A DNA stretch of 64,000 nucleotides, taken from positions 187,550,001-187,614,000 of the forward strand of contig NW_027362770.1 in assembly GCF_046119375.1 (NCBI RefSeq), given 5' to 3'. A program made the translations under genes and the position numbers. Positions 11,065 through 46,579 of this stretch are shown piece by piece (position 1 is the first letter of the stretch; each line of letters opens with the position of its first letter). Under the pieces are notes generated by a model that was given only the letters and a program-made list of their open reading frames with translations, was not told the DNA's origin and did not search any database. The stretch is from Phyllobates terribilis (lineage: Eukaryota).

Positions 11065-12080
11065 ACTCAGTGACCTCTAGTGGCAGCATTAGTGTAGCAC
11101 CACTTCACTGTCTGTAGTGACAACTAGTGGCGAGTGAGTGCAGCACCACATCAATCTAGTCTGCAGTGACCTCTAGTGGCAGCAATAAGTGCAGCACCAC
11201 TTCAATTCACTGTCTGCAGTGACCTCTAGTGGTAGTAATAAGTGTAGCATCGCTTCAATCCACTGTCTGCAGTGACCTCTACTGGCAGCAAGAACTGTAG
11301 CACCACTCCAATCCACTGTCTGCAGTGACCTCTAGTGGCAGCAAGAAGTGTAGCACCAATCCAATCCACTGTATGCAGTGACCTCTAGTGGCAGCAAGAA
11401 GTGTAGCATCACTTCAATCCACTGTCTGCAGTGACCTCTAGTGGTAGCAATAAGTGCAATACCACTTCACTGTCTGTAGTGACATCTAGTGGTGAGTGAA
11501 TTCAGCACCCCTTTAATCCACTGCAGTGACCTCTAGTGGTAGCAATAAGTGTAGCATCGCTTCAATCCACGGTCTGCAGTGACCTCTAGTGGCAGTAATA
11601 GTGCAGCACCACTTCAATCCACTATCAGCAGTGACCTCTAGTGGCAGCAATAAGTGCAGCACCTCTTCAGTCCACTACAAGTAAACTATAGCGGCCAGTG
11701 GTGGTTTAACACTTCATCTATGGGCTGTAGTGACCCGTAATGGTCAGTGGTAGTATAACAAACACTTCTTCATCTACTGTCTGCAGTGACCTCTAGAGGC
11801 CTTTGGTCGTATTACACTCCATCCATGGTCTGCTGTAAACTCTAGTGAACATAGGTGACCTAAATCTCCTCCATTATTGGTCTAAAGTGATCTCTAGTGG
11901 ACAATAATGATATAACAATCCTTCATCTACAGTGGCCTCTAGTGGTCAGTGGTGGTATAACACCAACTATGGTCTGCAGTGACTTCTAGTGGGCACAGGT
12001 GAGATAACAGCTAGTGGTCAATGTTGATATAACACTCAATCTGTTTTCTGCAGTGACCTCTAGTGGCCTGTAGTAATATC
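11065..12080. repeat. Degenerate ~55-bp tandem repeat with core GTGACCTCTAGTGGCAGC (CTCF-like motif on minus strand)
   Basis: Roughly 18 copies of CAGTGACCTCTAGTGG separated by diverging spacers. Confidence 0.85.
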
Positions 12081-21800: not shown

Positions 21801-24800
21801 CAGTATTATAGTAGTTATATTCTTGTACATAATAGCAGTATTATAGTAGTTATGTTCTTGTACATAGAGAGCAGTATTATAGTAGTTATATTCTTGTACA
21901 TAGAGAGCAGTATTATAGTAGTTATATTCCTGTACATAGGGGGCAGTATTATAGTAGTTATATTCTTGTACATAGGAGCAGTATTATAGTAGTTATATTC
22001 TTGTACATAGGGGCAGTATTATAGTAGTTATATTCCTGTACATAGGGGCAGTATTATAGTAGTTATATTCTTGTACATAGGAGCAGTATTATAGTAGTTA
22101 TATTCTTGTACATAGGAAGCAGTATTATAGTAGTTATATTCCTGTACATAGGGGGCAGTATTATAGTAGTTATATTCTTGTACATAATAGCAGTATTATA
22201 GTAGTTATGTTCTTGTACATAGAGAGCAGTATTATAGTAGTTATATTCTTGTACATAGAGAGCAGTATTATAGTAGTTATATTCCTGTACATAGGGGGCA
22301 GTATTATAGTAGTTATATTCTTGTACATAGGAGCAGTATTATAGTAGTTATATTCTTGTACATAGGGGCAGTATTATAGTAGTTATATTCTTGTACATAG
22401 GGGCAGTATTATAGTAGTTATATTCCTGTACATAGGGGCAGTATTATAGTAGTTATATTCTTGTACATAGGGGCAGTATTATAGTAGTTATATTCTTGTA
22501 CATAGGGAGCAGTATTATAGTAGTTATATTCTTGTAAATAGGGGGCAGTATTATAGTAGTTATATTCTTGTACATAGGAGCAGTATTATAGTAGATATAT
22601 TCTTGTACATAGGGGCAGTATTATAGCGGTTATATTCTTGTACATAGGGGGCAGTATTATAGTAGTTATATTCTTGTACATAATAGCAGTATTATAGTAG
22701 TTATATTCTTGTACATAGGGGGCAGTATTATAGTAGTTATATTCTTGTACATAATAGCAGTATTATAGTAGTTATATTCTTGTACATAGAGAGCAGTATT
22801 ATAGTAGTTATATTCTTGTACATAGAGAGCAGTATTATAGTAGTTATATTCTTGTACATAGAGAGCAGTATTATAGTAGTTATATTCGTGTACATAGGGG
22901 CAGTATTATAGTAGTTATATTCTTGTACATAGAGAGCAGTATTATAGTAGTTATATTCTTGTACATAGAGAGCAGTATTATAGTAGTTATATTCCTGTAC
23001 ATAGGGGGCAGTATTATAGTAGTTATATTCTTGTACATAGGAGCAGTATTATAGTAGTTATATTCTTGTACATAGGGGGCAGTATTATAGTAGTTATATT
23101 CTTGTACATAATAGCAGTATTATAGTAGTTATGTTCTTGTACATAGAGAGCAGTATTATAGTAGTTATATTCTTGTACATAGGGGGCAGTATTATAGTAG
23201 TTATATTCTTGTACATAGGGGCAGTATTATAGTAGTTATGTTCTTGTACATAGAGAGCAGTATTATAGTAGTTATATTCTTGTACATAGGGGGCAGTATT
23301 ATAGTAGTTATATTCTTGTACATAATAGCAGTATTATAGTAGTTATGTTCTTGTACATAGAGAGCAGTATTATAGTAGTTATATTCTTGTACATAGAGAG
23401 CAGTATTATAGTAGTTATATTCCTGTACATAGGGGGCAGTATTATAGTAGTTATATTCTTGTACATAGGAGCAGTATTATAGTAGTTATATTCTTGTACA
23501 TAGGGGCAGTATTATAGTAGTTATATTCCTGTACATAGGGGCAGTATTATAGTAGTTATATTCTTGTAAATAGGGGGCAGTATTATAGTAGTTATATTCT
23601 TGTACATAGGAGCAGTATTATAGTAGATATATTCTTGTACATAGGGGCAGTATTATAGCGGTTATATTCTTGTACATAGGGGCAGTATTATAGCAGTTAT
23701 ATTCCTGTACATAGGGGGCAGTATTTTAGTAGTTATATTCTTGTACATAGGGGGCAGTATTATAGTAGTTATATTCTTGTACACAGGGGCAGTATTATAG
23801 TAGCTATATTCTTGTACATAGGGGCAGTATTATAGTAGTTATATTCTTGTACATAGGTAGCAGTATTATAGTAGTTATATTCTTGTACATAGGAGCAGTA
23901 TTATAGTAGTTATATTCCTGTCCATAGGAGCAGTATTATAGTAGTTATACTCTTGTACATAGGGGGCAGTATTATAATAGTTATATTCCTGTACATAGGA
24001 GCAGTATTATAGTAGTTATATTCTTGTACATAGAGGCAGTATTATAGTAGTTATATTCTTGTACATAGGGGGCAGTATTATAGTAGTTATATTTACCTGC
24101 AGGGAGATGCGGTAATCTTTTCCAGGACACATACGATTCACGTCGGCGTCCCAGAGCTCATTGTACAGTTTGGACAGCTCATGATTCAGGTTTCCTCTGT
24201 GAAGAACAGAAATTATTCAGAAGTTGATTGAATCTCGCTCTGGTTGAACAGAACTGATGGGACACAACTATTATTTCCATCCGGGACGTTTTTATGTGTT
24301 TTTTACGGGAGGAGTTTTGAGAACTTTATTATGTTTCCTTATTGTCGGTGTTGTCACCTTTCTTTGTTTCTCACTTTCGGTGCAGATTAACATTAATTAA
24401 TACTTAAAGTGAAATCATTACCGTTGTCATCAGGTTCTCTGTCCCTTATTATTGGTCGCAGACAAGTCAAAGATCTCATGTATGTGAATGATAAGATAAA
24501 TGAGAACAATGGGGACGCGCGTTGGGGGGGGGGGGTGTCGGAGGAACAGTCCTGCTCAGTGGAGATAACAGTCTAACGTTTTTTTTGACAGATGTATATA
24601 GCGGGGGATTCGCGCTGACGCTGCCTGACGCTTACAGTAAAGTTGCTGCATAAGCGGGATTTCTTCTATTACATTCCCTTTGTATGACCCCATCGTAGAG
24701 GGATACAGATGGCAGAAGTGACTCCATCCTGACGCGTCGAGACCAAAGCAGCCGTCACAAGGACGCAACATGTCTGATGTAGAGTCCGGATCCTACAACG

Positions 24801-27800
24801 TAAGGAAGGGAACAAAAATCTGCATTGAGGGCGAGACCCCTGTACTAAGTCTAATGACCCCGTATGTTTCTATCCCTCTGTGTCCTGTGTGCATACAGGA
24901 CGAATGCTGAGCAGGCAACAGCGCGCTCTGTAAATCAGACCAGAATAATACAGGCGGCGACATTTTTTATATGGACCCGAGCTTCCTGTGACAATAGCCA
25001 GTGACGGAGGAGGGAGGAACGCGGCGGAGGAGGAGGAGGAGAAAAAGAGGAGGGAGGAGGAGGAGAAAAAGAGGAGGGAGGAGGAGGAGTGCAGCGGAGG
25101 GGAAAAAGAGGAGGGAGGAGGAGGAGCGCGGCGGAGGGGAAAAAGAGGAGGGAGGAGGAGGAGCGCGGCGGAGGGGAAAAAGAGGAGGGAGGAGGAGGAG
25201 CGCGGCGGAGGGGAAAAAGAGGAGGGAGGAGGAGGAGCACGGCGGAGGGGAAAAAGGGAAAGGAGGAGGAGCGCTGCGGAGGGGAAAAAGGGAGACGAGA
25301 AGCGCGGTGGAGGGGAAAAAGGGGGGAGAGGAGGAGGAGCGCGGCGGAGGGGAAAAAGGGGGGAGAGGAGGAGGGGCAAAAGGGAGACGAGAAGCGCGGC
25401 GGAGGGGCAAAAGGGAGACGAGAAGCGCGGCGGAGGGGAAAAAGGGAGACGAGAAGCGCGGCGGAGGGGAAAAAGGGAGACGAGAAGCGCGGCGGAGGGG
25501 AAAAAGGGAGACGAGAAGCGCGGCGGAGGGGAAAAAGGGAGACGAGAAGCGCGGCGGAGGGGAAAAAAGGGAGAGGAGAAGTGCGGCGGAGGAAGAAGGA
25601 GTGGAGGACTGTGGAGAAGGTAAAGAAAAAGATGGAAATAGAGGAAAATTTGAAGAGAATTTTTAAAAGGGTAGAGGAAATGACTGGGGCGAAGATGAAT
25701 TCTAGAAACGGAAGGAAAAAAACTGGACATATAGTAAGAGGGGTAAATGTGGGGCACATGGAAGTCGGATTATGAGGACCTGGGTCAAGAGAAAGGAAAG
25801 GGGGAATGTAGGAAAAAAACCTGGAGTGAGGGGCGACAGCCGGGAGATGATACGGATTAACTGACAAAGAGCGGAGGCTACGAGAGGACGGATCTGACAA
25901 AGGACTGGAGGCCAAACTGCTGACGTGACCCGGCGGCGACCATGATCCGGCCTTTATGAGAAGCTGCTGGGTTATCGGAGTTCACAGTCTGAATTGGGTT
26001 TATCCTAACAGAAAACTCTGCCGAACAGGCAAAAACCACCAGTAAAGCGGTGCAGGGGCAGATACGGGAGAGGAAACGCCTTCAGGTTGAACAAGAATAA
26101 ATTACAATCCAAAAAGGTAATAATACATCGCCCATTCAGTGTTATCATAGGGACACTTGGCCTTATAACAACTAGCTACAGTCCAGCTTCTACATTTCTA
26201 GGCAAGGTCAAATACAATGAAAAAGAGATTTGTCTGGTGTCTGCGGCCAGTGTCCCCAGAGTCTGCTGCAACACAGAGACAGGAAGTGTTGTCATAGGAG
26301 CCATATCACAATTGAATAAAACATTCTCCTTTAAGAAGTAAAAACAAAATCTACCAGACTGACTTTCTAAGTGACTGAACATATGACAGGAAGGATCAGG
26401 GTGGGCACTGTTACTAGAGACAACATGGGAGCGGCATTAGACCACAAAACCGCAGCCACCCACACATCCAGTATCCTCAGCTGCTGCGCACCTCTCTGCA
26501 CCGGCTGCATCCAAACTGCTCAGGCACCAGGAAATATAAATACACAAAACTGGTTCCATCTAATCTCTGCAGGTGACGTCTATGACCCATGGGAGAAAGG
26601 GGAACGAGAAAATCATCAAACCCAGAGAAACAAGCCCTGCTGGGTGTGGAAAGACATGAGGCCCCCTCTAGTGGTGGCTGTATAAATCTGTATGTAGTGA
26701 GCTCCCTCTAGTGGTGGCTGTATAAATCTGTATGTAGTGAGCTCCCTCTAGTGGTGGCTGTATAATCTGTATGTAGTGAGCTCCCTCTAGTGGTGGCTGT
26801 ATAAATCTGTATGTAGTGAGCTCCCTCTAGTGGGGGCTGTATAAATCTGTATGTAGTGAGCTCCCTCTAGTGGTGGCTGTATAAATCTGTATGTAGTGAG
26901 CTCCCTCTAGTGGTGGCTGTATAAATCTGTATGTAGTGAGCTCCCTCTAGTGGTGGCTGTATAAATCTATATGTAGTGAGCTCCCTCTAGTGGTGGCTGT
27001 ATAAATCTGTATGTAGTGAGCTCCCTCTAGTGGTGGCTGTATAAATCTGTATGTAGTGAGCTCCCTCTAGTGGTGGTTGTATAAATCTATATGTAGTGAG
27101 CTCCCTCTAGTGCTGGCTGTATAAATCTGTATGTAGTGAGCTCCCTCTAGTGGGGGCTGTATAAATCTGTATGTAGTGAGCTCCCTCTAGTGGTGGCTGT
27201 ATAAATCTGTATGTAGTGAGCTCCCTCTAGTGGTGGCTGTATAAATCTGTATGTAGTGAGCTCCCTCTAGTGGTGGCTGTATAAATCTGTATGTAGTGAG
27301 CTCCCTCTAGTGGTGGTTGCATAGATCTGTATGTAGTGAGCTCCCCCTAGTGGTGGCTGTATAAATCTGTATGTAGTGAGCTCCCTCTAGTGGTGGCTGT
27401 ATAAATCTGTATATAGTGAGCTCTCCCTAGTGGTGGCTGTATAAATCTGTATGTAGTGAGCTCCCTCTAGTGGTGGCTGTATAAATCTGTATATAGTGAG
27501 CTCTCCCTAGTGGTGGCTGTATAAATCTGTATGCAGTGAGCTCCCTCTAGTGGTGGCTGTATAAATCTGTATGCAGTGAGCTCCCTCTAGTGGTGGCTGT
27601 ATAAATCTGTATGTAGTGAGCTCCCTCTAGTGGTGGTTGCATAGATCTGTATGTAGTGAGCTCCCCCTAGTGGTGGGTGTATAAATCTGTATGTCGTGAG
27701 CTCCCCCTAGTGGCGGTTGCATAAATCCACATGCAGTGAGCTCCCTCTAGTGGTGACTACAGGCTGACAGAGTCTGATCATTCAATGCTATGGCTGTGTG

Positions 27801-29110
27801 GAGGGACGGGGGATTCCTTTTTACAGGGGTCTTCTCCTTCCAGCTGTAGGTCCTTGGTGAAGAAGAGATCCACAATCTAAATCTGACAACCCCGACAGTC
27901 TCTTATGGATTTGCCCTTCGCCTCCCCAGCGGTTTCCGTGTCACATGATGCACAATGGCGCTGCGCTGCTGGTTTTGGAGAACGTCCAGACAAGGTGTAT
28001 TCAGTCTCCAGCACTACGGCCAATGGATTAACACTGCGAATGCCAAAGAGGAAAGTGGCGCAGTAGATGAACGAGTGGTGCAGTCTCCCATTGTGACCAA
28101 TCAGGTTGATGCTTTCCAGAGATCTGAGCTGTAGTTGGACTTGTTACCACCAGGTGGCAAAACTGAGCACATGAGAAAGCGGAATATCAAACTGCACCCT
28201 GAGGCATGATGGGAGTGATCTATGGAACAAAATCCGGGTACCTAGGAAGGATTCCTGCGAGTATCAGAAGTGGTCGGAGCGCCCCTTTAATACAGGACAC
28301 AAGGGCCATTGTTATGGTCGGTGTATTACGGGGTGTACGTAATAACAGGATTACTTCGGTGTCATCCAATCCCTGCTCCAGAGGCCAAAAACAAGGACAG
28401 ACCCCAAATAATCGGCCCCTCCCCGGTGTCCGTCCGGAGCTCTGTGCAGTAAATGCTGGTACTTCCTGGGGGAAGGGAACGGCGAATCTGCAGGGACGTC
28501 CTCACCTGAGCTTCAGGAGCTGCGACGGGTCCACACAAAGCAATGGTGTCCGGGACGGCTGTGGACCCCATTATTGTCCCCCACACGGCTGCGCTTATGA
28601 GGCTGCCGGAGACCTTTACCGTTAATAAAGGCATAGACTAACCTAAGAGGAAGGAAATGCGGCCCCCTTGTTAGAAGATCTCGGGGGTCTCACCCCAAAT
28701 AATGATTTTCTGTGATGTCCGAATTTAAAGGGGCGTTTCTCTAGCCCTTTAATTCAGAGGTGATGATCCGTGTAGATGCAGAGGAGCGCGACCCAAGTAT
28801 TGGGGTCCAGGAAAGAGGTCAGGGGATGGGATGGGGGTGGGGGGGGGGGGGTCTCAGCTTCTGGACTCCAATGATCAAAACTTCTGACAGATGGAAAGTT
28901 TATTTTAAAGTGACAGTCACCCCTTTAAGTGGCCTCATAGTTGCCCCAAAAGCTTGCAATCAATACCCATAGGAAATGATTACTGGAGCGCAGGGTCTCC
29001 AGCTTGTGGCTCTGCATGCTGGGAGTAGTAGTGTTGTGGCTCCCAGGATGCTCCACCAGGTCGGCTATAGGGGGCGCTCTGCCCCGGGCTGGCTCTCACC
29101 TGGCGGCCAT
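15885..29110 (-). CDS. endou: Poly(U)-specific endoribonuclease, XendoU type (291 aa, no signal peptide or somatomedin-B domains)
   Basis: Seven GT-AG exons with consistent phases: 29100-29110 (MAAR), 24097-24196, 18359-18470, 17672-17793, 17053-17165, 16234-16387, 15885-16148. Protein [22 protein letters not shown]...[22 protein letters not shown]...[10 protein letters not shown]...[15 protein letters not shown] closely matches recalled Xenopus XendoU; catalytic His, His and Lys present. Confidence 0.95.
16560..16989. mobile_element. MITE: ~430-bp element with ~195-bp inverted arms, TA-flanked, in endou intron 5
   Basis: Left arm CTTGTAGAAATCCC... mirrors right arm ...GGGATTTCTACAAG; the ORF track shows near-identical peptides on opposite strands (16615+ and 16752-); TA at 16558-16559 and 16990-16991. 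Confidence 0.8.
17190..17590. repeat. Degenerate tandem repeat (ACCACCTCCTCAGGGTTAGCTCC-like) in endou intron 4
   Basis: Repeated CACCTCCTCAG / AGGGTTAGCTCC motifs with irregular spacing. Confidence 0.55.
18540..24091. repeat. 34-36-bp satellite (GCAGTATTATAGTAGTTATATTCTTGTACATAGG[G/A])n filling endou intron 2
   Basis: Visible period, about 155 copies; same family at 50507-50970 and 57985-64000. Confidence 0.98.
24990..25610. repeat. Purine-rich minisatellite (GAAGCGCGGCGGAGGGGAAAAAGGGAGAC / GGAGGA)n in endou intron 1
   Basis: Visible ~29-32 bp period; produces R/G/E-rich and P/S/F-rich spurious ORFs. Confidence 0.88.
26665..27755 (-). repeat. 40-bp satellite (GAGCTCCCTCTAGTGGTGGCTGTATAAATCTGTATGTAGT)n, about 27 copies, in endou intron 1
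   Basis: Visible 40-bp period; reverse complement of the array at 32620-34315. Confidence 0.96.
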
Positions 29111-29457
29111 GACGAGCTCCGTCCTCCGGTCTCCGGTCGCTTCAGACAAAATACTGCAGAGCCGCCGGATGAAAGAGACCGGATGAGCCAATCACAGCGC
29201 AAGGCCTGGCCCCGCCCACCTATAGCGGAGACAAGGGCGTGGACATAACTGATGTCTCCCGGAGCCAATCAGTGAGCGGATAGAGGAGGAGTCTGGCCCT
29301 GACAGGGAAGAGCGAGGATAATGATTGGCAGCGCTCTGAGCCAATCAGGGATCGGTGGGCGGAGCCAGGCTGACATCTCGGCCGCGTTCTACTTTAGAAC
29401 GTTCAGTTGTAACTTTGTATCTTTCCTGGGAGTCGGCGCCGTTTAGTCACCGGCCAC
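29111..29457. promoter_or_regulatory. Bidirectional promoter shared by endou and cyb5r3
   Basis: Start codons diverge at 29110 (-) and 29458 (+); CCAAT at 29188, 29265, 29341 and ATTGG at 29324, all in RCCAATCA context; GC boxes at ~29210 and ~29357; CpG-rich. Confidence 0.85.
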
Positions 29458-32400
29458 ATGGGGGCGCACATCAGCACGGTGAGCGGGGCCGGGGATGACA
29501 CAGCACGGAGGGCACAGTATGGAGGGCAGGAAGCGGCGGCCGCAGGGCCTGGGTGGGTGTGACCACTGCTGTGTGCAGGCAAGAGGTTCTGCAGCAGCCG
29601 CCCCCTGCTCGGGAAGAGGCACTCCAGGCCTCAGCGCTTACAATCTACTGCCAAATCGGGCGGATGAGGCTGGTGGTCCTGGTGTAGCCCCCAGTGCAGT
29701 CGTCAGGTGACCTTGGAGGTGGTCGGTGGGTTCTGGGCAGGGCCCCAGTATTGGACCATATAGATCCTATGCTAATGGGGCTATAAGTACCCAGTGGGTG
29801 GTCCTGAGCCTGTGGTAAACGCCCCTGCTCCTCCCCGCCCCTTTGTCTTAATTGACGACGCCATTTATATTCCGCATGTCCCGACCCCTCTCCGCCTCTC
29901 TTCCCCTCCTCTCCCCAGCCTCTGTCCCCTCCGGGGTGTTCTCTTGTTCCCCCTCTCCCCAGCCTCTGTCCCCTCCGGGGTGCCCTCTTGATCCCCCCCT
30001 CTCCCCTCCGGGGCAGTCCCGACCCTTCTCAGCCTCTGTCCCCTCCGGGGTGCCCTCTTATTCCCTCTCCCCTCTGGGGCGATCCTGACCCTTCTCTGCC
30101 TCTGTCCTCTCTGGGCCTCTGTCCCCTCCGGGGTGCCCTCTTGATCCCCCCTCTCCCCTCCGGGGCAGTCCCGACCCTTCTCAGCCTCTGTCCCCTCCGG
30201 GGTGCCCTCTTATTCCCTCTCCCCTCTGGGGCGATCCTGACCCTTCTCTGCCTCTGTCCTCTCTGGGCCTCTGTCCCCTCCGGGGTGCCCTCTTGTTCCC
30301 TCTCCCCTCTGGGGCGGTCCTGACCCTTCTCAGCCTCTGTCCCCTCCGGGGTGCCCTCTTGTTCCCTCTCCCCTCCGGGGCAGTCCCGACCCCTTTCAGC
30401 CCCTGTCCCCTCCGGGGTGCCGTCTTATTCCCTCTCCCCTCCGGGGCGGTCCCGATCCTTCTCTGCCTCTGTCCCCTCCGGGATGCCCTCTTGATCCCCC
30501 TCTCCCCTCCGGGGCGGTCCCGAACCCTTTCAGCCTCTGTCCCCTCCGGGGTGCCCTCTTGTTCCCTCTCCCCTCTGGGGCGGTCCCGACCCTTCTCTGC
30601 CTCTGTCCCCTCTGGGCCTCTGTCCCCTCCGGGGTGCCCTCTTGTTCCCCCTCTCCCCTCTGGAGCGGTCCTGACCCTTTTCTGCTTCTGTCCCCTCCAG
30701 GGTGCCCTCTTGGTCCCCCTCTCCCCTCCGGGGCGGTCCCGACCCCTTTCAGCCTCTGTCCCCTCCGGGGTGCCCTCTTGTTCCCCCTCTCCCCTCTGGA
30801 GCGGTCCCGACCCTTTTCTGCTTCTGTCCCCTCCGGGGTGCCCTCTTGGTCCCCCTCTCCCCTCCGGGGCGGTCCCGACCCCTTTCAGCCTCTGTCCCCT
30901 CCGGGGTGCCCTCTTATTCCCTCTCCCCTCTGGGGCGGTTCCGACCCTTCTCTGCCTCTGTCCCCTCTGGGCCTCTGTCCCCTCCGGGGTGTCCTCTTGA
31001 TCCCCCTCTCCCCTCCGGGGTGGTCCCGACCCCTTTCAGCCTCTGTCCCCTCCGGGGTGCCCTCTTATTCCCTCTCCCCTCTGGGGCGGTCCCGACCCTT
31101 CTCTGCCTCTGTCCCCTCTGGGTCTCTGTCCACTCCGGGGTGCCCTCTTTTTCCCCTTCTCCCCTCTGGGGCGGTCCCGACCCTTCTCAGCCTCTGTCCC
31201 CTCCGGGGTGCCCTCTTGTTCCCCCTCTCCCCTCTGGGGCGGTCCTGACCCTTCTCTGCCTCTGTCCCCTCTGGGCCTCTGTCCTCTCCGGGGTGCCCTC
31301 TTGTTCCCTCTCCCCTCTGAGGCGGTCCCGACCCTTCTCAGCCTCTGTCCCCTCCGGGGTGCCCTCTTATTCCCTCTCCCCTCTGGGGCGATCCTGACCC
31401 TTCTCTGCCTCTGTCCTCTCTGGGCCTCTGTCCCCTCCGGGGTGCCCTCTTGTTCCCTCTCCCCTCTGGGGCGGTCCCGACCCTTCTCAGCCTCTGTCCC
31501 CTCCGGGGTGCCCTCTTATTCCCTCTCCCCTCTGGGGCGATCCTGACCCTTCTCTGCCTCAGTCCCCTCTGGGCCTCTGTCCCCTCCTGGGTGCCCTCTT
31601 GATCCCTCTATCCCCTCCGGGGCGGTCCTGACCCCTCTCAGCCTCTGTCCCCTCCGGGGCACTGCAACTGTCAAGTTCAACTGTCAATTAAGTCTAAGTG
31701 AGCAGAGCAAGTAAGTGTTTATCAGAGCTCAGGACCACCCATTTGCCACTTCATTAGCATATGGTCGAAAGATAAAATTGTAGATCTCCGTTTAAAGGCC
31801 ATGTGGGCGGATCCTCACTTGTATTTAGGTTCCCAGTGGCCATAAAGCAGCTGACACTCCCTTTAATTCTCTCCTTGGCCACTAGGGGGATTTAAGTCAC
31901 ATGACTCATTGTCCAGTTCCGATCCTGTGTCCGGCCCCTGTATTGTGGTGGGGGACACGGCCTGTATTGTGGTGGGGGACACGGCCTGTATTGTGGGCGT
32001 ATTAAAGGGATGACACCAAATTAGGTTCACATTGCTATTAAGGGATGATGTGGTCAGGCTGGTGGGGTGGGGTGGGGTGGGGTCTGGTCCCTGGTCAGAT
32101 TAGGGTCCCTGTCTCCATGATGCGGGGGCGGTCAGGACCCCCCTCCGGCTGGTGATGTCGGCTGCTGTTTACACCAGTAATAATTTGGATCGTGTTCCAG
32201 CTGTCACGCGGTCGCCCTCGTATAGGAATGCAGGGATAATGGGGCCGTATCTCCGACATTCAGCAGCGGCCTGTGCTCCTCCACATCCCTTCCTGAGGCA
32301 TTATGGGTGCTGGAACTCCCCCCAGTGATTGACCCACCCATGTGTGCTCTGGATTATGGAAATCTCTCTACAATCCTGGATGAGGTTCCTTTCTCCACCA

Positions 32401-35400
32401 CTAGTTGTAGTTCGGCTGTTAACCCCTTCATTGCTGAGGCGTTGCAAGCGATTAACCTGAAATCTGTTGCTTCTCTCATGTAAAGGTTGATGGGTATCGG
32501 GGGTTTGGCTGATGCTCAATTCTACCGATCTCACAACACGTTGTGCACTGATACCGGGCAAACATGGAGGAACTGTAGCCTCTTATGTATGTCAGGTGTG
32601 GGGAGAGGGTGTCCCATAGGAGAGCTCACTACATACAGATTTATACAGCCCCCACTAGGGGGAGCTCACTACATACAGATTTATACAGTTACCACTAGGG
32701 GGAGCTCACTACATACAGATTTATACAGCCACCACTACTGGGAGCTCACTACATACAGATTTATACAGCCCCCACTAGGGGAGCTCACTACATACAGATT
32801 TATACAGCCACCACTACGGGGAGCTCACTACATACAGATTTATACAGCCCCCACTAGGGGGAGCTCACTACATACAGATTTATACAGCCACACTACGGGG
32901 AGCTCACTGCATACAGATTTATACAGCCCCCACTAGGGGGAGCTCACTACATACAGATTTATATAACCACCACTAGAGGGAGCTCACTACATACAGATTT
33001 ATACAGCCACCACTAGGGGGAGCTCACTACATACAGATTTATACGGCCACCACTAGGGGGAGCTCACTACATACAGATTTATACGGCCACCACTAGGGGA
33101 GCTCACTACATACAGATTTATACAGCCATCACTATGAGGGAGCTCACTACATACAGATTTATACGGCCACCACTAGGGGGAGCTCACTACATACAGATTT
33201 ATACGGCCACCACTAGGGGAGCTCACTACATACAGATTTATACGGCCACCACTAGGGGGAGCTCACTACATACAGATTTATACGGCCCCACTAGGGGGAG
33301 CTCACTACATACAGATTTATACGGCCACCACTAGGGGGAGCTCACTACATACAGATTTATACGGCCACCACTAGGGGGAGCTCACTACATACAGATTTAT
33401 ACGGCCACCACTAGGGGGAGCTCACTACATACAGATTTATACGGCCACCACTAGAGGGAGCTCACTACATACAGATTAATACGGCCCCCACTAGAGGGAG
33501 CTCACTACATACAGATTAATACGGCCCCCACTAGAGGGAGCACACTACATACAGATTAATACGGCCCCCACTAGAGGGAGCACACTACATACAGATTAAT
33601 ACGGCCCCCACTAGAGGGAGCACACTACATACAGATTAATACGGCCCCCACTAGAGGGAGCACACTACATACAGATTAATACGGCCCCCACTAGAGGGAG
33701 CACACTACATACAGATTAATACGGCCCCCACTAGAGGGAGCACACTACATACAGATTAATACGGCCCCCACTAGAGGGAGCACACTACATACAGATTAAT
33801 ACGGCCCCCACTAGAGGGAGCACACTACATACAGATTAATACGGCCCCCACTAGAGGGAGCACACTACATACAGATTAATACGGCCCCCACTAGAGGGAG
33901 CACACTACATACAGATTAATACGGCCCCCACTAGAGGGAGCACACTACATACAGATTAATACGGCCCCCACTAGAGGGAGCACACTACATACAGATTAAT
34001 ACGGCCCCCACTAGAGGGAGCACACTACATACAGATTAATACGGCCCCCACTAGAGGGAGCACACTACATACAGATTAATACGGCCCCCACTAGAGGGAG
34101 CACACTACATACAGATTAATACGGCCCCCACTAGAGGGAGCACACTACATACAGATTAATACGGCCCCCACTAGAGGGAGCACACTACATACAGATTAAT
34201 ACGGCCCCCACTAGAGGGAGCACACTACATACAGATTAATACGGCCCCCACTAGAGGGAGCACACTACATACAGATTAACACGGCCACCACTAGGGGGAG
34301 CTCACTACATACAGCTCCTGTAGTAGTCAATAGGAAGCGTATAAATACATTTTTAGCTAGCTCCCTCTAGTGGTGGCTGCCCACTATGTTGGTAAATCTG
34401 TATTTCTCGTGTCTCCATCACAGTAGATATTTTTTCACCTTTAAGTGAATGACGCGAGATGTTCAGGAAAGTCTTTATAACGTCCAACAGCTGAAAGAAA
34501 CCTGTGAATCTGTGTGTGATTATGACCCTTCCTGTATATTACAGAGATGGCCGAGCGGCTGCAGGCAGGAGAGTAGGTGACTCCACACAGGGCGGCCCTG
34601 ACTGAAGAATGTACAATCTCAGGGGACAGGAGGGCTGTGCTGACTCATAGGAGTGGAATTGTGAGCGAAATACAGGGGCGGACAGATCCTAAATATATCC
34701 ACTGTACAGAATAGTGAGCGCAGCTCTGGAGTATAATACAGGATGTAACTCCGGATCAGTAATGTAATGTATGTACACAGTGACTGCACCAGCAGAATAG
34801 TGAGTGCAGCTCTGGAGTATAATACAGGAGGTAACTCAGGATCAGTAATGTAATGTATGTACACAGTGACTGCTCCAGCAGAATAGTGAGTGCAGCTCTG
34901 GGGTATAATACAGGAGGTAACTCGGGATCAGTAATGTAATGTATGTACACAGTGACTGCACCAGCAGAATAGTGAGTGCAGCTCTGGAGTATAATACAGG
35001 ATGTAACTCAGGATCAGTAATGTAATGTATGTACACAGTGACTGCACCAGCAGAATAGTGAGTGCAGCTCTGGAGTATAATACAGGATGTAACTCCGGAT
35101 CAGTAATGTAATGTATGTACACAGTGACTGCTCCAGCAGAATAGTGAGTGCAGCTCTGGGGTATAATACAGGAGGTAACTCGGGATCAGTAATGTAATGT
35201 ATGTACACAGTGACTGCACCAGCAGAATAGTGAGTGCAGCTCTGGAGTATAATACAGGATGTAACTCAGGATCAGTAATGTAATGTATGTACACAGTGAC
35301 TGCACCAGCAGAATAGTGAGTGCAGCTCTGGAGTATAATACAGGATGTAACTCAGGATCAGTAATGTAATGTATGTACACAGTGACTGCACCAGCAGAAT

Positions 35401-38400: not shown

Positions 38401-41400
38401 ATAATACAGGAGGTAACTCAGGATTCAGTAATGTAATGTATGTACACAGTGACTTCACCAGCAGAATAGTGAGTGCAGCTCTGGGGTATAATACAGGATG
38501 TAACTCAGGATCAGTAATGTATGTACACAGTGACTGCACCAGCAGAATAGTGAGTGCAGCTCTGGAGGATAATACAGGATGTAACTATGGATCAGTAATG
38601 TAATGTATGTACACAGTGACTGCACCAGCAGAATAGCGAGTGCAGCTCTGGAGTATAATACAGGATGCTACTCAGGATCAGTAATGTAATGTATGTACAC
38701 AGTGACTGCACCAGCAGAATGTGAGTGCAGCTCTGGGGTATATACAGGAGGTAACTCAGGATCAGTAATGTAATGTATGTACACAGGGACTGCACCAGCA
38801 GAATAGTGAGTGCAGCTCTGGAGTATAATACAGGAGGTAACTCTGGATCAGTAATGTATGTACACAGTGACTGCTCCAGCACAATAGTGAGTGCAGCTCT
38901 GGAGTATAATACAGGAGGTAACTCAGGATCAGTAATGTAATGTATGTACACAGTGACTTCACCAGCAGAATAGTGAGTGCAGCTCTGGGGTATAATACAG
39001 ATGTAACTCAGGATCAGTAATGTATGTACACAGTGACTGCACCAGCAGAATATGTGAGCGCAGCTCTGGAGGATAATACAGGATGTAACTCAGGATCAGT
39101 AATGTAATGTAAATACACAGTGACTGCACCAGCAGAATAGTGAGTGCAGCTCTGGAGTATAATACAGGATGTAACTCACGATCAGTCATGAATGTATGTA
39201 CACAGTGACTGCTCCAGCAGATAGCGAGTGCAGCTCTGAGTATAATACAGGATGCTACTCAGGATCAGTAATGTAATGTATGTACACAGTGACTGCACCA
39301 GCAGAATAGTGAGTGCAGCTCTGGGGTTTAATACAGGATGTAACTCAGGATCAGTAATGTATGTACACAGTGACTGCACCAGCAGAATAGTGAGCGCAGC
39401 TCTGGAGTATAATATAGGAAGTAACTCAGGATCAGTAATGTAATGTATACACACTATTCTGCTGGAGCAGTCACTGAGTGCAGCTCTGGAGTATAATACA
39501 GGATGTAACTCACGATCAGTCATGTAATGTATGTACACAGTGACTGCACCAGCAGAATAGTGAGCGCAGCTCTGGAGTATAATACAGGATGTAACTCAGG
39601 ATCAGTAATGTAATGTATGTACACAGTGACTGCACCAGCAGAATAGTGAGTGCAGCTCTGGAGTATAATACAGGATGTAACTCACGATCAGTCATGTAAT
39701 GTATGTACACAGTGACTGCACCAGCAGAATAGTGAGTGCTGCTCTGGAGGATAATACAGGATATGTGATGTCTCTTGTATTTTGGTGTTAGATGACTTGC
39801 GCTCTCGTTTGCGTTGCTGTTTCCGTCGTTGCTCCTGGCCGTCGCTCGGTTAACGCTGCCGCTCTCTTTCAGTTGGGGCGGGTCGTTACTTATCCTTTCT
39901 ACATCGTCTTTGCGATCTTCAGAAGACTTTTCGGGAAGCCCCCTCCGGCCATCACCTTAGAGAGCGCGGATGTGAAATACCCCCTGCGGCTGATCGATAA
40001 GGAGGTAAGTCCTGATGCCGACGGTCACTTGATCGGGATGAACGGGACAATAATTGGCTCCATCTTGATGTCTGCTCCTAGGTCATCAGCCATGACACCC
40101 GCCGCTTCCGCTTTGCGCTGCCGTCTCGTGAACACATCCTGGGTCTCCCCATCGGTAAGAATGAGGGCTGTATCGGTCACTCGAGTCGGATGTAGCTTTG
40201 GCCCCCGTCCTTTCTAACCGCCCCCGTCCCCTGTCATTCCCATCCGCCCCCGGTCTGGTGACTTCTTCTCTTTCGGTTGCTTCCAGGGCAGCACATCTAC
40301 CTGTCGGGCCCGGGTGGACGGGAACCTGGTTGTCCGCCCCTACACTCCGGTGTCCAGTGACGATGATAAGGGCTACGTGGACCTGGTGGTGAAGGTGCGT
40401 GCGCCGTCCCGTGGTCGGCTAGACGATCGGCGTCCGCCTCGTTAATCCGAGTATTTTCTTCCAGATTTATTTAAAGGCATACACCCCAAATTCCTGAGGG
40501 CGGCAAAATGTCTCAGTACCTAGAAGCCCTGAAGATCGGGGAGACCATCGACTTCAGGGGCCCAGTGGGCTGCTGACCTACAGCGGGAGGGGTAATGTCC
40601 CACCGACCGGCGGGGGAGGGGAGGGATCGGGCACGAGGGGCGATCAGGATACAATTTTTTCTTGTTCTTTAAGGAACTTTCGAGATCCGTCCTGACAAGA
40701 AATCTCCACGGTCACCAAGAAGGTTCAGCAGCTGGGACTGATCGCGGGGGGCACAGGTACTGGCGCCGGGACTACAACTCTCATCATATGAGAGGGGAGG
40801 GGTTTATGCAGATAATTCCCTGGCAGTGGATGTGATTGGCTGTCAGTCTGTGCCCCGCCCCCTGGGATCGTGATGGTGGATGATGATTGCGTCTTGTCTC
40901 CTCTGCAGGGATCACCCCCATGCTGCAGCTCATCCGCGCCGTCATGAAGGACAAAGACGACCGCACTGTCTGCTACCTGCTGTTTGCTAATCAGGTCTGT
41001 ATGATGGCCGCCATGAGGGCGGGGGCTGCTGTGACTGGTGGTGGAGCGGATACGACTCCTGTGACTGGTAGTTCGTGGGGAGGGGCTGGCGGTAGTGATG
41101 TGGGGAGGGGCTGGCGGTAGTGGATGTGGGAGGGGCTGCCGGTAGTGGATGTGGGGAGGGGCTGCGGTAGTGGATGTGGGGAGGGGCTGGCGGGTAGTGG
41201 ATGTGGGAGGGGCTGGCGGTAGTGGGATGTGGGGAGGGGCTGGCGGTAGTGGATGTGGGGAGGGGCTGGCGGTAGTAGATGTGGGGAGGGGCTGGCGGTA
41301 GTAGATGTGGGGAGGGGCTGGCGGTAGTAGATGTGGGGAGGGGCTGGCGGTAGTAAGTGTGGGGGGGGAGGGACGACTGGCGGTAGTAGGTGTGTGGGGG

Positions 41401-42998: not shown

Positions 42999-44027
42999 GC
43001 GCCATTGTGTGAGCCGAGCGCAGAGAGAACGTCTCCTCCATCCCGGCATCGTTGTGACAGGCGCGCGGACTGCTGCCGCCAGCGGGGGGCGCTACTGCTG
43101 TCAGTGACGCTGGGTATCCATAGGTGGGGGCTCTTAAAGGGGCGGGTGTTATGCACTAGGCAGGTTATAAGTTCAGTCGGCACTTGACTAAACCAAAGTA
43201 AGGACTTTGTGGTAATTGAAAGTGCCAGCTGGGAGTTGTAGTCCTACTTCTCCAATTGAGTATTCGATGTGACACTAAGGAAAGTGGAAACGCGGCGGGC
43301 GCTCGTCACAAGGTGCCTGGATCTGCTTCTGACCCCTCTACTTGCACTATCCCCCTTTTCGCCTCGTCTCTCGCCTTCGTCACCTTTCCGTGTGTACAAT
43401 GTATTTTTATTCTTCATCAAAAATACAGGAAAATACTTTGATTTCCGTCTCCCGTCTCATTATTTAATATTATTATTTTTTTTTTTTTGCAGTGCAATAC
43501 CAAATTCTGCCACCAGAGGGCACTAATACAAGATGTTTTTAACAGATATTTAGGGTGTATGGCCCTTTAAAAACAAAGTACAAAGTTTGAATTCTGGTCA
43601 ATCGTAATTAAAGGGGCGCTCCATACAGTCCCGGGTTCCCAGTGATCGGCTGTAAACTCTGGATGGATGGCTACAGCGCTTCTAATGGAAAAAGGAAGAA
43701 TTACAATTGCCATTTAAAATTAGCAGAGTAAAAGGGGGTCGTAGAGCAGAGACCACCTAAAAGAAGACTTTACTAGAAAGGTCCCTTTAATAATAATAAT
43801 GTACAGCAGTGATTCATGCTCTTGTAGTGACGGCATCAGACAATGGAGAGAAACATCGGAGCCAGAATGTAACTGGACTCAACAATAGGGTCATGTGACG
43901 CCGCGTGCACCGCACCGCAACGTGGGAGAGGCTAAAGGAGAACCAGCAAACGTGTACAAGCCCCTGCTGTACTAATACAAGCGCCAATCCTCTCCATAAA
44001 CATTTACATGAGACTGTATTCCTGTAG

Positions 44028-45015
44028 CCCCACCACTAGGGGGAGCTCCCTTGTATACAGAGATACATGATAAGATCCCTGTCTGCTGCCACCACTAGGG
44101 GGAGCTACCTGTATACAGAGATACAGGATACGATCCTGTCTGCAGCCACCACTAGGGGGAGCTCCCTGTATACAGAGATACATGAATAAGATCCTGTCTG
44201 CAGCCACCACTAGGGGGAGCTCCCTGTATACAGAGATACATGATAAGATTCTGTCTGCAGCCACCACTAGGGGGATGCTCCCTGTATACAGAGATGCATG
44301 ATAAGATCCTGTCTGCAGCCACCACTAGGGGGAGCTCCCTGTATACAGAGATACAGGATACGATCCTGTTTTCAGCCACCACTAGGGGGAGTTCTCTGTA
44401 TACAGAGATACATGATCAGATCCTGTCTGCAGCCACCACTAGGGGGAGCCCCTGTCTACAGAGATGCATGATCAGATCCTGTCTGCAGCCACCACTAGGG
44501 GGAGCTCCCTGTATACAGAGATGCATGATAAGATCCTGTCTGCAGCCACCACTAGGGGGAGCTACCTGTATACAGAGATACAGGATACGATCCTGTTGCA
44601 GCCACCACTAGGGGGATTTCCCTGTATACAGAGATGCATGATAAGATCCTGTCTGCAGCCACCACTAGGGGGAGCTCCCTGTATACAGAGATACATGATA
44701 AGATCCTGTCTGCAGCCACCACTAGGGGGATTTCCCTGTATACAGAGATGCATGATAAGATCCCTGTCTGCAGCCACCACTAGGGGGATTTCCCTGTATA
44801 CAGAGATGCATGATAAGATCCTGTCTGCAGCCACCACTAGGGGGAGCTACCTGTATACAGAGATACAGGATACGATCCATGTTTGCAGCCACCACTAGGG
44901 GGAGTTCCCTGTATACAGAGATGCATGATAAGATCCTGTCTGCAGCCTCCACTAGGGGGAGCTCCCTGTATAGAGAATGTTTGATTATAAAACAATGCAG
45001 TGAGCTCCCTCTAGT
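44028..45015 (+). repeat. ~57-bp satellite (CAGCCACCACTAGGGGGAGCTCCCTGTATACAGAGATACATGATAAGATCCTGTCTG)n
   Basis: About 17 copies; shares the CAGCCACCACTAGGGGGAGCT core with the 40-bp arrays. Confidence 0.93.
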
Positions 45016-45529
45016 GGGAGAAATACAGAACAGTCACTATAAATGCAGCAGATTGGGATCTCTGTATCAGTAAAACAAGTCTCCTGTAGATATTATGAAT
45101 TGCTGCTCATCAGACCTATAACCAGAGATGGAAATTGCTGTAACAGGATACCATCTGTGCGCCCCTATGGACAACACTTCCTAACGGTCAGTCAGAAGAT
45201 AGTGTTGGCAGGGGTGTCCGGCTGTCTTGCTATAACAATATCTGGGTGTGTAAAGCATGGAGGCCGCGGGGGTCTGGTAAAGCTCAGACATATCCTAATA
45301 TGTAATACTTTACTGATACCCAGCGACTTAGTGCAGATAGCGCCACCTTCTGTCCATATAGAGGAATGCCTACACAGGGGGGGGGGGGGGTGTTATAAGT
45401 TTCTCACAGCTGAAGGTTTGTCACAATGTATCAGTGTGTGAGCCAGCAGCAGCTGCACATCCCTCCTGTGCTGGACGTGTCGTTACAATGTATCAGTCTG
45501 GAGTCCGGTTGTGGTCAGATTCCCGGTGA

Positions 45530-46247
45530 CTATAGGAAGTTGATGTAGACTTTGCCGATGTTCCTCCGTCCGGTCCTCCGGGACATACAGGCGTCCAGCA
45601 GGTCCCGGGTGGGCAGGAAGGTGTCGGTGTCCTGGATGTACTGCTGCAGGGCGCGCTCCCCGCCGTTCTTCTTCTCCTCCTTGCTGACGCTCTCCAATAA
45701 GATCCCGCGGACGTCCTTGGGTTTTCCGGTTAATCCGAACACCATGAAGAGTCCCAGGCAGTCGGCGCCGACCAGGCGGCAGAACTCCTCCAGCTTCTCG
45801 TAGCGGCTGCGCTCCTTGGAGGAGGAGTCGGGGAGCTGCATCTCCTTCAGGGCCCCCGGTGGAAGGTGTCGGGGGCCCCTCGGCCGTCGCCGGTGAAGTC
45901 GGACATCTGCAGGGCCTGGACGGCGATCTGGAGCCGCACCGACTTGTCGGGACCCAGCAGCGTCCAGATCCAGTCCACCCGAGGAGCGCGGTCTGCTGCG
46001 CGGTCATCTTGCTGGTGCAGATCCGCTCCTCCACACCTTTCTCCACGCAGAAGGTGATGAAGTCCACTAGGAAGATGTCCGTCAGGGTGTCCGTGTGGGG
46101 ACGCAGCGTCCCATGAGGGTCCTGGAATCCCAGGTAGTGGCGGAGCTTGTGCGAGGCGTGCACCACTCCCTGGCTGAAGACCTCGCACACGACGTCCGCC
46201 TTCTCCAGCGGGGGCACGATCACCGGGGCGGACGGCGTCTGACCCAT
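45530..46247 (-). CDS. rep15: Rab15 effector protein (intronless CDS, ~239 aa after correcting two 1-nt deletions)
   Basis: Three track ORFs join into MGQTPS...VVCEVFSQGVVHASHKLRHYLGF...SKMTAQQTALLG|VDWIWT...LQIAVQALQMS...|SRYEKLEEFCRLVGADCLGLFMVFG..GKPKDVRG...GKVYINFL, matching recalled human REP15; frameshifts at ~45978-45980 and ~45851-45900; next to ppfibp1 as in human 12p11. Confidence 0.9.
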
Positions 46248-46579
46248 GGCGGTCAGATCGGAGGAGACGAGCGGAGCAGCTGTGCGCTGCCAGCGGGGAC
46301 AGACGGGGGCGGGGACGGGAGCTGCCCGAACCAGACCGACAACTTTCACACGGAGACACTTAAAGGGGCGGTTGTCATAACGGAGCAAAGTCTGACCTGA
46401 AGGCTTAGAAAAAGCGTCGGAGGTGAGACTGCAGCTCAGGACCAGCCTCTTCGGTGTAGATGCAATGCCAAACACAACCTGAGGACAAGGGGGCGCTGGT
46501 GTTTTCTTATCATATACGTTCCCTTTAAGCAGGGGTTGAATGAAAGAAGCTGTCACTTTAAAAAAAAGTGTAACGTCTC

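What the first reader, a model, noticed from the sequence alone, without database searches (positions are those of the whole stretch)
26665..34315. One CTCF-like satellite in two inverted arrays bracketing the endou/cyb5r3 promoter in divergent orientation
Seen: the 40-bp unit occurs as ~27 copies at 26665-27755 and as ~42 reverse-complement copies at 32620-34315, one array in intron 1 of each gene, both in the same sense relative to the host transcript. Each unit carries CCACTAG[A/G]GGGAGCT, which fits the CTCF core CCASYAGRKGGCRSY except for C->A at the conserved GGC position. The motif points away from the promoter on both sides. Established: clusters of divergent CTCF sites mark loop/TAD boundaries. 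Inference: tandem amplification may have built a high-valency insulator around this promoter, i.e. a satellite-made boundary. The mismatch may weaken binding, so this is a hypothesis.
Basis: partly seen in the sequence, partly recalled or inferred. Interest (0 to 1): 0.72.

Follow-up and report, generated by a model that had tools for sequence, protein, structure and literature searches.

The report
Inverted CTCF-motif minisatellites flanking frog promoter
Two arrays of one 40-bp repeat sit in opposite orientation in the first introns of the head-to-head frog genes endou and cyb5r3, and nearly every unit strongly matches the binding motif of the genome-folding protein CTCF; they look like ordinary repeat expansions from a small palindromic element, and any boundary role is untested.

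Summary
Array A (26664-27755, 27 units) and array B (32622-34314, 42 units) are one 40-bp family in inverted orientation. A lies in endou intron 1 and B in cyb5r3 intron 1. In both, the motif is sense to the host gene and points away from a 348-bp CCAAT/GC-box bidirectional promoter.

The core matches the CTCF consensus at 14 of 15 positions (A at C12). It scores about 18-20 of 26 bits on a CTCF matrix recalled from memory (p about 1e-7). The 20 youngest units of B carry a weaker variant (13.8 bits).

The insulator reading is not shown.
- 58% of the window is tandem repeat.
- The arrays share no flanking homology.
- Two other satellite families in the window carry the same core.
- Array B and the 57-bp array each end in a solo inverted copy forming a hairpin, which suggests amplification of one arm of a short palindromic, MITE-like element.
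- The core is no more conserved than the rest of the unit.
- Divergent orientation of two arrays has a 1-in-4 chance. The sense orientation also happens to be free of GT splice donors.

The scan has noted many other CTCF-motif minisatellites elsewhere in this genome. I judge it a plausible, untested CTCF platform of a kind known from mammals.

The parts
26664..27755 (-). Array A. 27 units of the 40-bp minisatellite with the CTCF-like core on the minus strand (commonest form CCACCACTAGAGGGAGCTC). It lies in endou intron 1, 1344 bp from the exon 1 donor.
   Evidence: TRF; sequence. 27 hits at p<1e-4 on the minus strand of array A, median 18.1 bits. 24 exact cores. CpG o/e 0.04.
32622..34314 (+). 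Array B. 42 units of the same family with the core on the plus strand. It lies in cyb5r3 intron 1, 3144 bp from the exon 1 donor. The proximal part (to about 33470) is heterogeneous, with units scoring about 19-20 bits. The distal part (about 33470-34280) is about 20 near-identical units of a weaker variant (13.8 bits).
   Evidence: TRF; sequence; PWM; unit alignment.
34355..34404 (-). Solo inverted, degenerate unit 45 bp beyond the distal end of B (core 34359-34379). It pairs with the last unit of B into a hairpin and is the presumed second arm of a palindromic source element.
   Evidence: blastn; alignment. DNA fold -31.7 kcal/mol, z -7.6.
29110..29457 (.). 348-bp interval between the endou and cyb5r3 start codons, read as a bidirectional promoter. 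It holds 4 CCAAT boxes (3 forward, 1 reverse) and 2 GC boxes and no TATA. GC is 0.62 and CpG o/e 0.69.
   Evidence: Sequence; motif and CpG counts.
29099..29109 (-). endou exon 1 coding part (ATGGCCGCCAG, then a gt donor).
   Evidence: Sequence. It joins exon 2 in frame to give [11 protein letters not shown]..., matching the XendoU N-terminus.
24097..24196 (-). endou exon 2. This makes 24197-29098 intron 1.
   Evidence: PDB 2C1W residues 4-38, E 5e-14, with ag acceptor and gt donor.
29458..29478 (+). cyb5r3 exon 1 coding part (MGAHIST, the N-myristoylated membrane form), followed by a gt donor.
   Evidence: Sequence.
39873..40005 (+). cyb5r3 exon 2. This makes 29479-39872 intron 1, of which 82% is tandem arrays.
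   Evidence: (match to CYB5R3 structures).
44030..45018 (+). Related 57-bp satellite (44030-44976) sharing the 19-22 bp core on the plus strand, 1 kb downstream of the cyb5r3 stop codon. It also ends in a solo inverted core (44999-45018, minus strand).
   Evidence: TRF; 17 PWM hits; blastn; sequence; hairpin z -5.3.
11068..12069 (-). 53-bp satellite (11068-11676) with a degenerate tail reaching 12069. It has a CTCF-like core on the minus strand (CCACTAGAGGTCACT) and lies downstream of the endou 3' end.
   Evidence: TRF. 12 PWM hits, median 18.5 bits. Sequence.

Best explanation
A and B are two independent arrays of a 40-bp minisatellite family that earlier scan notes (unchecked) report elsewhere in this genome.

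Origin (inferred from anatomy). The family arose by tandem amplification of one arm of a short palindromic, MITE-like element, through unequal crossing-over or replication slippage. This happened in a frog chromosome region saturated with satellites.

Motif (shown). The amplified arm carries a CpG-free, near-consensus CTCF core, so every unit is a potential CTCF site.

Function (inferred). I think the arrays were most likely not built or kept as an insulator. Their divergent, sense-to-transcript orientation is either chance (1 in 4) or a by-product of selection on intronic repeats, because the sense orientation has no GT dinucleotides and so no cryptic splice donors.

If the chromatin is open, CTCF could load on them. 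One 40-bp unit is about one full 11-finger footprint. A (reverse) and B (forward) would then stall cohesin arriving from outside and leave the 4.9-kb promoter island between two loop domains. That step is conjecture.

My odds: repeat origin as described 0.75; CTCF occupancy in some tissue 0.45; a real, selected boundary function 0.2.
For: - 58% of the window is tandem arrays. cyb5r3 intron 1 is 82% satellite, and endou intron 2 is almost entirely a 36-bp satellite.
- The flanks of A and B share no homology, so the arrays arose independently rather than by a segmental inversion.
- B and the 57-bp array each end with a solo inverted copy of the core 25-45 bp past the array, forming hairpins with z -7.6 and -5.3.
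- The only block shared by the 40-, 57- and 53-bp units is the core.
- Within arrays the core is not less variable than the rest of the unit: 9 minor-allele counts over 19 core columns against 15 over 21 non-core columns in A.
- The youngest, homogenised block of B carries a weaker motif, 13.8 against about 19-20 bits.
- The 36-bp satellite keeps one orientation on both sides of the promoter, so the locus has no general mirror symmetry.
- GT density is 1 per kb in sense orientation against 141-148 per kb antisense.
- Literature: frog subtelomeric minisatellites derive from pieces of transposable elements and expand with recombination. In X. tropicalis, CTCF-motif density correlates with recombination rate (r 0.54) (PMC10794172 and its Supplementary Table 14).
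Against: - The motif match is strong: 14 of 15 consensus positions and p about 1e-7 on the recalled matrix.
- The core is CpG-free, so DNA methylation at C2 cannot block binding (PMC10484683).
- All four CTCF-like arrays in the window follow one pattern, reverse to the left of the promoter and forward to the right. The exact pattern has probability 1/16.
- The shared core coincides almost exactly with the CTCF footprint, which is also what selection for CTCF binding would produce.
- No terminal inverted repeats at element ends or target-site duplications were found, and array A has no palindromic partner, so the MITE origin is inferred and not proven.
- The 86-bp satellite in cyb5r3 intron 1 carries GTRAG donors in sense orientation (10.5 per kb), so a splice filter is not a general rule here.
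Confidence: 0.6

Rival explanations
1. The two arrays are a functional, high-valency divergent CTCF boundary. CTCF bound to reverse sites in A and forward sites in B stops cohesin coming from either side and insulates the endou/cyb5r3 promoter from both neighbouring domains.
For: - A has 27 hits at p<1e-4 and 35 of B's 42 units pass; best p is about 1e-7.
- The window has 74 consensus hits against 0.82 expected.
- Divergent geometry is typical of TAD boundaries (PMC7422557).
- The vertebrate motif and orientation rule hold in a frog (X. tropicalis, PMC8270788).
- Tandem CTCF sites insulate better than single ones (PMC7087399 and PMC7200164, abstracts seen).
- The CpG-free core escapes methylation control.
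- Outer arrays at 11.1 kb (reverse) and 44.0 kb (forward) repeat the pattern.
Against: - There are no occupancy or contact data.
- C12, which is read by the vertebrate-conserved Glu362 of zinc finger 4, is replaced by A in every unit.
- There is no extra conservation of the core.
- A weaker variant swept half of B.
- Canonical single sites already exist nearby, for example 43507 at 23.1 bits and 49983 at 22.4 bits.
- Deleting a CTCF-rich repeat locus can leave a boundary intact (Firre, PMC5899154, abstract).
- The sample is only two arrays.
Confidence: 0.25
2. The orientation was set by splicing constraints and has nothing to do with chromatin. Intronic copies survive only in the orientation that adds no 5' splice sites to the pre-mRNA. 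For two divergent genes this automatically gives an inverted, motif-outward pair. This explains the orientation only and is compatible with the best explanation.
For: The sense strand of both arrays has about 1 GT per kb and no GTRAG. The antisense strand has 141-148 GT per kb and 14-25 GTRAG per kb. The 36-bp satellite in endou intron 2 also has fewer GT in sense orientation, 29 against 109 per kb.
Against: The 86-bp satellite in cyb5r3 intron 1 has 10.5 GTRAG per kb in sense orientation, and the C-rich array has more GT in sense than antisense. The 53- and 57-bp arrays lie outside the coding exons (UTR extents unknown) yet show the same orientation pattern.
Confidence: 0.15
3. The conserved core is kept because it is the recognition sequence of a transposase or another DNA-binding protein of the source element, and its likeness to the CTCF motif is incidental.
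For: The core is the shared block of three otherwise different satellite units, and it lies in inverted solo copies at array ends, as the arm of a palindromic element would.
Against: No autonomous element, target-site duplication or defined element termini were found in the window. A chance match at p about 1e-7 in a 40-bp unit is unlikely, about 1e-5 per family before allowing for the number of families. Earlier notes from this scan report unrelated CTCF-motif minisatellites elsewhere in the genome (unchecked).
Confidence: 0.12
4. The pair is the two arms of one event: a segmental inverted duplication, or a foldback-type element with long terminal inverted repeat arrays that happens to enclose the promoter.
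For: There are long inverted arms, up to 991 nt at 86-92% complementarity, separated by about 4.9-5.5 kb.
Against: There is no homology between the distal or proximal flanks of A and B. The enclosed DNA is a CCAAT/GC-box promoter with the first exons of two conserved genes. The arrays differ in sub-variants and length.
Confidence: 0.03

Closest known systems
Mammalian tandem-repeat CTCF platforms (DXZ4, FIRRE, ICCE) (PMC6985041, PMC6125249)
   Same: Tandem arrays in which each unit carries a co-oriented CTCF motif. Orientation of the array is expected to matter for long-range contacts.
   Different: They are X-linked, bound mainly on the inactive X, and have measured CTCF binding and contact effects. 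Here the array is autosomal-type and intronic, comes as an inverted pair, and has no binding data.
Divergent CTCF site clusters at TAD boundaries (PMC7422557)
   Same: Reverse-oriented motifs on the left and forward-oriented motifs on the right, within about 5-100 kb, around an active promoter region.
   Different: Known boundaries use a few unique sites with the canonical C at position 12. Here there are about 60 repeat-borne sites with A at that position, and insulation has not been measured.
Transposon-borne CTCF motif expansions (for example rodent SINE B2; from my own knowledge, not checked here)
   Same: A mobile or selfish sequence carrying a CTCF-like core multiplies potential sites in a lineage-specific way.
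   Different: Here the multiplication is local tandem amplification of one arm of a small palindromic element. In the SINE case it is dispersed retrotransposition.
Frog extended-subtelomere minisatellites derived from parts of transposable elements (PMC10794172)
   Same: Dense arrays of short units derived from pieces of transposable elements, in a GC-richer, satellite-saturated region. In X. tropicalis, CTCF-motif density rises with recombination rate and satellites.
   Different: That paper does not describe a satellite whose unit is itself a CTCF motif. The chromosomal position of this window and the recombination rate here are unknown.

Membership tests
CTCF binding site (sequence level) | Match to the 15-bp CORE read by zinc fingers 3-7 | tested here: met
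   14 of 15 positions match the consensus. On the PWM, units score 18-20 of 26.1 bits, p about 1e-7; the late B variant scores 13.8 bits (matrix MA0139.1 recalled from memory, column sums consistent).
CTCF binding site (sequence level) | Cytosine at CORE position 12, contacted by Glu362 of ZF4 | tested here: not met
   Position 12 is A in all units of A, B and the 57-bp array. The role of C12 is described in PMC10484683. A occurs there in about 11% of sites in the recalled matrix.
CTCF binding site (sequence level) | Occupancy by CTCF in vitro or in vivo | not testable with these tools
Tandem-repeat CTCF platform (DXZ4/FIRRE/ICCE kind) | One co-oriented CTCF motif per unit along a tandem array | tested here: met
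   A: 27 hits, all on the minus strand. B: 35 of 42 units, all on the plus strand.
Tandem-repeat CTCF platform (DXZ4/FIRRE/ICCE kind) | CTCF/cohesin binding and an effect on long-range contacts | not testable with these tools
   This needs ChIP or CUT&Tag and Hi-C in this species.
Divergent-CTCF TAD boundary | Reverse sites upstream and forward sites downstream within 5-100 kb | tested here: met
   A (reverse) and B (forward) are 4866 bp apart. The outer arrays at 11.1 kb (reverse) and 44.0 kb (forward) follow the same pattern.
Divergent-CTCF TAD boundary | Insulation minimum or directionality switch in contact maps | not testable with these tools
   No Hi-C data are available.
TE/MITE-derived minisatellite | The unit is traceable to part of a dispersed element (inverted arms, solo copies) | tested here: inconclusive
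   Solo inverted copies at the distal ends of B and the 57-bp array form hairpins. No target-site duplication, no defined termini and no partner for array A were found. Genome-wide dispersal is known only from unchecked scan notes.
Segmental inverted duplication / foldback element | Homology extends into the flanks of both arms | tested here: not met
   blastn of the flanks gives only chance-level hits of 9-18 bp.

The most novel reading that the evidence does not exclude
In this frog lineage a small palindromic element with a CpG-free, methylation-proof CTCF core has repeatedly seeded minisatellites at promoters and first introns. These arrays are bound by CTCF and act as repeat-built, orientation-specific loop-extrusion barriers. 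That would be a genome-wide wave of CTCF-site creation by tandem amplification, in place of retrotransposition, with this locus as a divergent pair isolating a bidirectional promoter.
Probability: 0.2. Interest if true: 0.75.

Novelty: new member of a known kind. Interest (0 to 1): 0.4.

Why it matters
If the arrays bind CTCF, they would show that ordinary minisatellite expansion can create dozens of oriented, methylation-insensitive cohesin barriers next to a promoter within a short evolutionary time.

That would give an amphibian counterpart to DXZ4/FIRRE and to SINE-borne CTCF sites. It would also offer a possible explanation for the published correlation in X. tropicalis between CTCF-motif density, satellites and recombination.

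If they do not bind, the locus is a useful negative control: strong motif matches inside satellites that are not functional sites. That matters for motif-based boundary prediction in repeat-rich genomes.

Tried and rejected
Exon junctions and transcription start sites therefore rest on sequence and homology only.
- Spliced models were never joined for a search. Exons were searched one by one by reference.
- Rfam scan of the whole window: no family reached threshold, so the arrays are not a known RNA.
- Test for extra constraint on the core within arrays: no difference from non-core positions.
- Segmental inverted duplication or foldback element: rejected for lack of flank homology.
- General mirror symmetry of repeats around the promoter: rejected, because the 36-bp satellite keeps one orientation on both sides.
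- Search for the unit in the supplements of the X. tropicalis genome paper: the core string was not found.
- The P. terribilis draft-genome paper says nothing on satellites.
- The large protein searches were not used because the PDB and Pfam scans settled the exons.
- Species identity was not established by me. An earlier follow-up note calls this genome the golden poison frog (unchecked). The roughly 86% identity of two endou exons to X. laevis XendoU fits an anuran.
Full report
**1. Observation**

Tandem Repeats Finder reports a 40-bp array at 26664-27755 (27.3 copies, 94% matches) and another at 32622-34314 (42.4 copies, 96% matches). Reading both stretches and the inverted-repeat scan shows that they are the same unit in opposite orientation. 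The arms reach 991 nt at 86-92% complementarity.

The string CCACTAGRGGGAGC occurs 24 times in A, all on the minus strand, and 35 times in B, all on the plus strand. None is expected in shuffled sequence. The published CORE consensus CCASYAGRKGGCRSY with at most one mismatch gives 74 hits in the window against 0.82 expected.

One correction is needed. The distal half of B (about 33470-34280) is about 20 near-identical units of a variant ending ...GAGCA and preceded by CCCCC. That variant has two consensus mismatches.

**2. Gene context**

I therefore mapped exons by sequence and by searching each exon separately.

- *cyb5r3, plus strand.* The ATG is at 29458. The coding part of exon 1 reads MGAHIST and is followed by a gt donor at 29479. 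Exon 2 is 39873-40005, preceded by a pyrimidine tract and ag. It aligns to the N-terminus of solved CYB5R3 structures. Later exons run to a stop near 42995.
- *endou, minus strand.* Exon 1 reads ATGGCCGCCAG and is followed by a gt donor after 29099. Exon 2 is 24097-24196. It matches XendoU (PDB 2C1W) residues 4-38 at E 5e-14 and joins exon 1 in frame. The next exon matches residues 39-75. Four further exons match Pfam XendoU positions 56-262.
- *Introns.* Array A lies in endou intron 1 (24197-29098), and array B lies in cyb5r3 intron 1 (29479-39872).
- *Promoter.* The 348 bp between the two start codons hold four CCAAT boxes and two GC boxes in a CpG-rich stretch.
- *Orientation.* Both arrays are sense to their host transcript. 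Because the genes diverge, this is the same fact as 'both motifs point away from the promoter'.

**3. Strength of the motif**

I scored the window with the JASPAR CTCF matrix MA0139.1. I recalled it from memory, and its column sums are self-consistent, but it should be re-checked against the database.

- Array A gives 27 hits at p<1e-4, with a median of 18.1 of 26.1 bits (p about 1e-7).
- In B, 35 of 42 units pass. Proximal units score about 19-20 bits and the homogenised variant 13.8 bits (p about 4e-6).
- A at position 12 is the second commonest base there in that matrix, at about 11%.
- Structurally, C12 is read by Glu362 of zinc finger 4, a residue conserved across vertebrates. The satellite therefore loses one specific contact.
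- Methylation blocks CTCF only at C2 when that position is a CpG (PMC10484683). The satellite core has CpA at positions 2-3 and no CpG at all, so methylation could not directly block binding.
- The same paper crystallised zinc fingers 3-11 on a 35-bp duplex and fingers 1-2 on the next 6 bp. A full footprint is therefore about one 40-bp unit.

**4. What the surroundings say**

*Repeat load.* The window is 58% tandem repeat. cyb5r3 intron 1 is 82% satellite, made up of a C-rich 66/151-bp array, array B and a 5-kb 86-bp satellite. endou intron 2 is almost wholly a 36-bp satellite. A repeat array in a first intron is therefore the local norm.

*Other families with the same core.* Two other satellite families in the window carry it.
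- A 57-bp array lies at 44030-44976 (plus strand), 1 kb beyond the cyb5r3 stop.
- A 53-bp array lies at 11068-11676, with a degenerate tail reaching 12069 (minus strand), beyond the endou 3' end.
- An alignment of the units shows that the core is essentially the only block they share.

*Palindromic ends.* B and the 57-bp array each end, 25-45 bp past the last unit, in a single inverted copy of the core (34359-34379 and 44999-45018). These junctions fold as DNA hairpins far better than shuffles, with z -7.6 and -5.3. At the end of B the pairing extends over a whole degenerate unit. This is what one expects if a short palindromic, MITE-like element had one arm amplified in tandem. An earlier scan note proposed the same origin for the 57-bp family elsewhere in this genome (unchecked).

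*Limits of the origin argument.* Array A has no such partner. I found no target-site duplications or element termini, so the origin is inferred.

*Independence of A and B.* The flanks of A and B share no homology. The pair is therefore not a segmental inverted duplication or a foldback element.

**5. Tests bearing on selection**

- Within arrays, variation in the 19 core columns (9 minor-allele counts in A) is no lower than in the 21 other columns (15).
- The most recent expansion in B spread the weaker variant.
- A divergent orientation of two arrays has probability 1/4.
- Adding the 53- and 57-bp arrays gives the pattern reverse, reverse | promoter | forward, forward, with probability 1/16. 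This is suggestive only.
- As a control, the 36-bp satellite has the same orientation on both sides of the promoter.
- A different reason for the orientation also exists. In sense orientation the 40-bp arrays have about 1 GT per kb and no GTRAG. In antisense orientation they have 141-148 GT and 14-25 GTRAG per kb. The orientation found therefore adds no candidate 5' splice sites to either pre-mRNA.
- That filter is not general. The 86-bp satellite has 10.5 GTRAG per kb in sense orientation.

**6. Literature**

- Divergent CTCF clusters are enriched at TAD boundaries (PMC7422557).
- X. tropicalis uses the vertebrate motif, with convergent orientation at TAD borders, and needs CTCF and Rad21 for TADs (PMC8270788).
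- Tandem CTCF sites strengthen insulation (PMC7087399 and PMC7200164, abstracts).
- Tandem repeats with one CTCF motif per unit are known from mammals: DXZ4, FIRRE and ICCE (PMC6985041 and PMC6125249). Deleting Firre left its boundary intact (PMC5899154).
- Frog chromosome ends carry long satellite-rich regions in which minisatellites derive from parts of transposable elements and expand with recombination. In X. tropicalis, CTCF-motif density correlates with recombination rate (r 0.54) (PMC10794172).
- I found no paper describing a frog satellite whose unit is a CTCF motif.

**7. Earlier scan notes**

This scan has logged 19 notes on CTCF-motif repeats in the same genome. They include a 40-bp satellite about 3 Mb away and three followed-up cases that were judged plausible but untested. 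These are leads only and not evidence. They do indicate that this locus is one instance of a recurrent pattern.

**8. Verdict**

The best-supported account is that A and B are independent expansions of a minisatellite derived from a palindromic element, whose amplified arm happens to be, or was inherited as, a strong CpG-free CTCF-like site.

Whether CTCF binds is an open question; I put it at about 0.45. Whether the pair acts as a boundary is a hypothesis; I put it at about 0.2-0.25. The mechanism it would use, a divergent barrier that stops cohesin arriving from outside and lets promoter-loaded cohesin out, follows known rules.

It is a new member of a known kind. The interest is moderate and lies mainly in the genome-wide pattern, less in this single locus.

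Noticed in passing
window 18560-24096: The 36-bp satellite (about 155 copies) fills nearly all of endou intron 2 and starts within 3 bp of the exon 2 splice donor (gt at 24096-24095). The same satellite recurs at 50505-50967 and 57986-64000 in the same orientation. Its unit contains ATAGGGGGCAG, which resembles the 3' half of a CTCF core but lacks the CCA.
   Followed up: partly
window 34707-39762: An 86-bp satellite (59 copies, 5 kb) in cyb5r3 intron 1 carries a GTGAGT donor-like string in sense orientation in many units (about 10.5 GTRAG per kb). It ends only 110 bp before the exon 2 acceptor. How splicing tolerates this is unexplained.
   Followed up: partly
window 29901-31659: A C-rich 66/151-bp tandem array (GC about 0.68, GC skew about -0.37) begins about 420 bp after cyb5r3 exon 1, so the template strand is G-rich. 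Possible R-loop or G-quadruplex relevance was not examined.
   Followed up: no
window 43507-43525, 49983-50001, 53951-53969, 45338-45356, 28144-28162: These are single-copy, canonical CTCF motif matches with C at position 12, scoring 19-23 bits. The best one lies just 3' of cyb5r3. Unique sequence in the window has 37 hits at p<1e-4, several-fold above expectation.
   Followed up: partly
window 29451-29469: A moderate CTCF matrix hit (15 bits) overlaps the cyb5r3 start codon. It is probably a by-product of the Kozak context plus the MGA codons.
   Followed up: no
window 5971-7029 (+): An intact 353-aa single-exon ORF has Gb3_synth and glycosyltransferase DXD Pfam domains (A4GALT-like). I recall A4GALT as a neighbour of CYB5R3 in human, but I did not check this.
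   Followed up: partly
window 45486-46583 (-): A Rab15-effector (PF15208) coding region is split between two reading frames: profile positions 1-90 in one ORF and 132-240 in another. This is an apparent frameshift, so either a pseudogene or a sequence error.
   Followed up: no
window 13865-15083 (+): A Tc1/Sleeping Beauty-type transposase remnant (HTH_SB and Tc3 HTH domains) is broken over several frames. It lies between the 53-bp array and the endou 3' end.
   Followed up: no
window 1-64000: About 58% of the window is tandem arrays from roughly 15 unit families. There is an N gap at 50971-51070, directly after a 36-bp array.
   Followed up: partly
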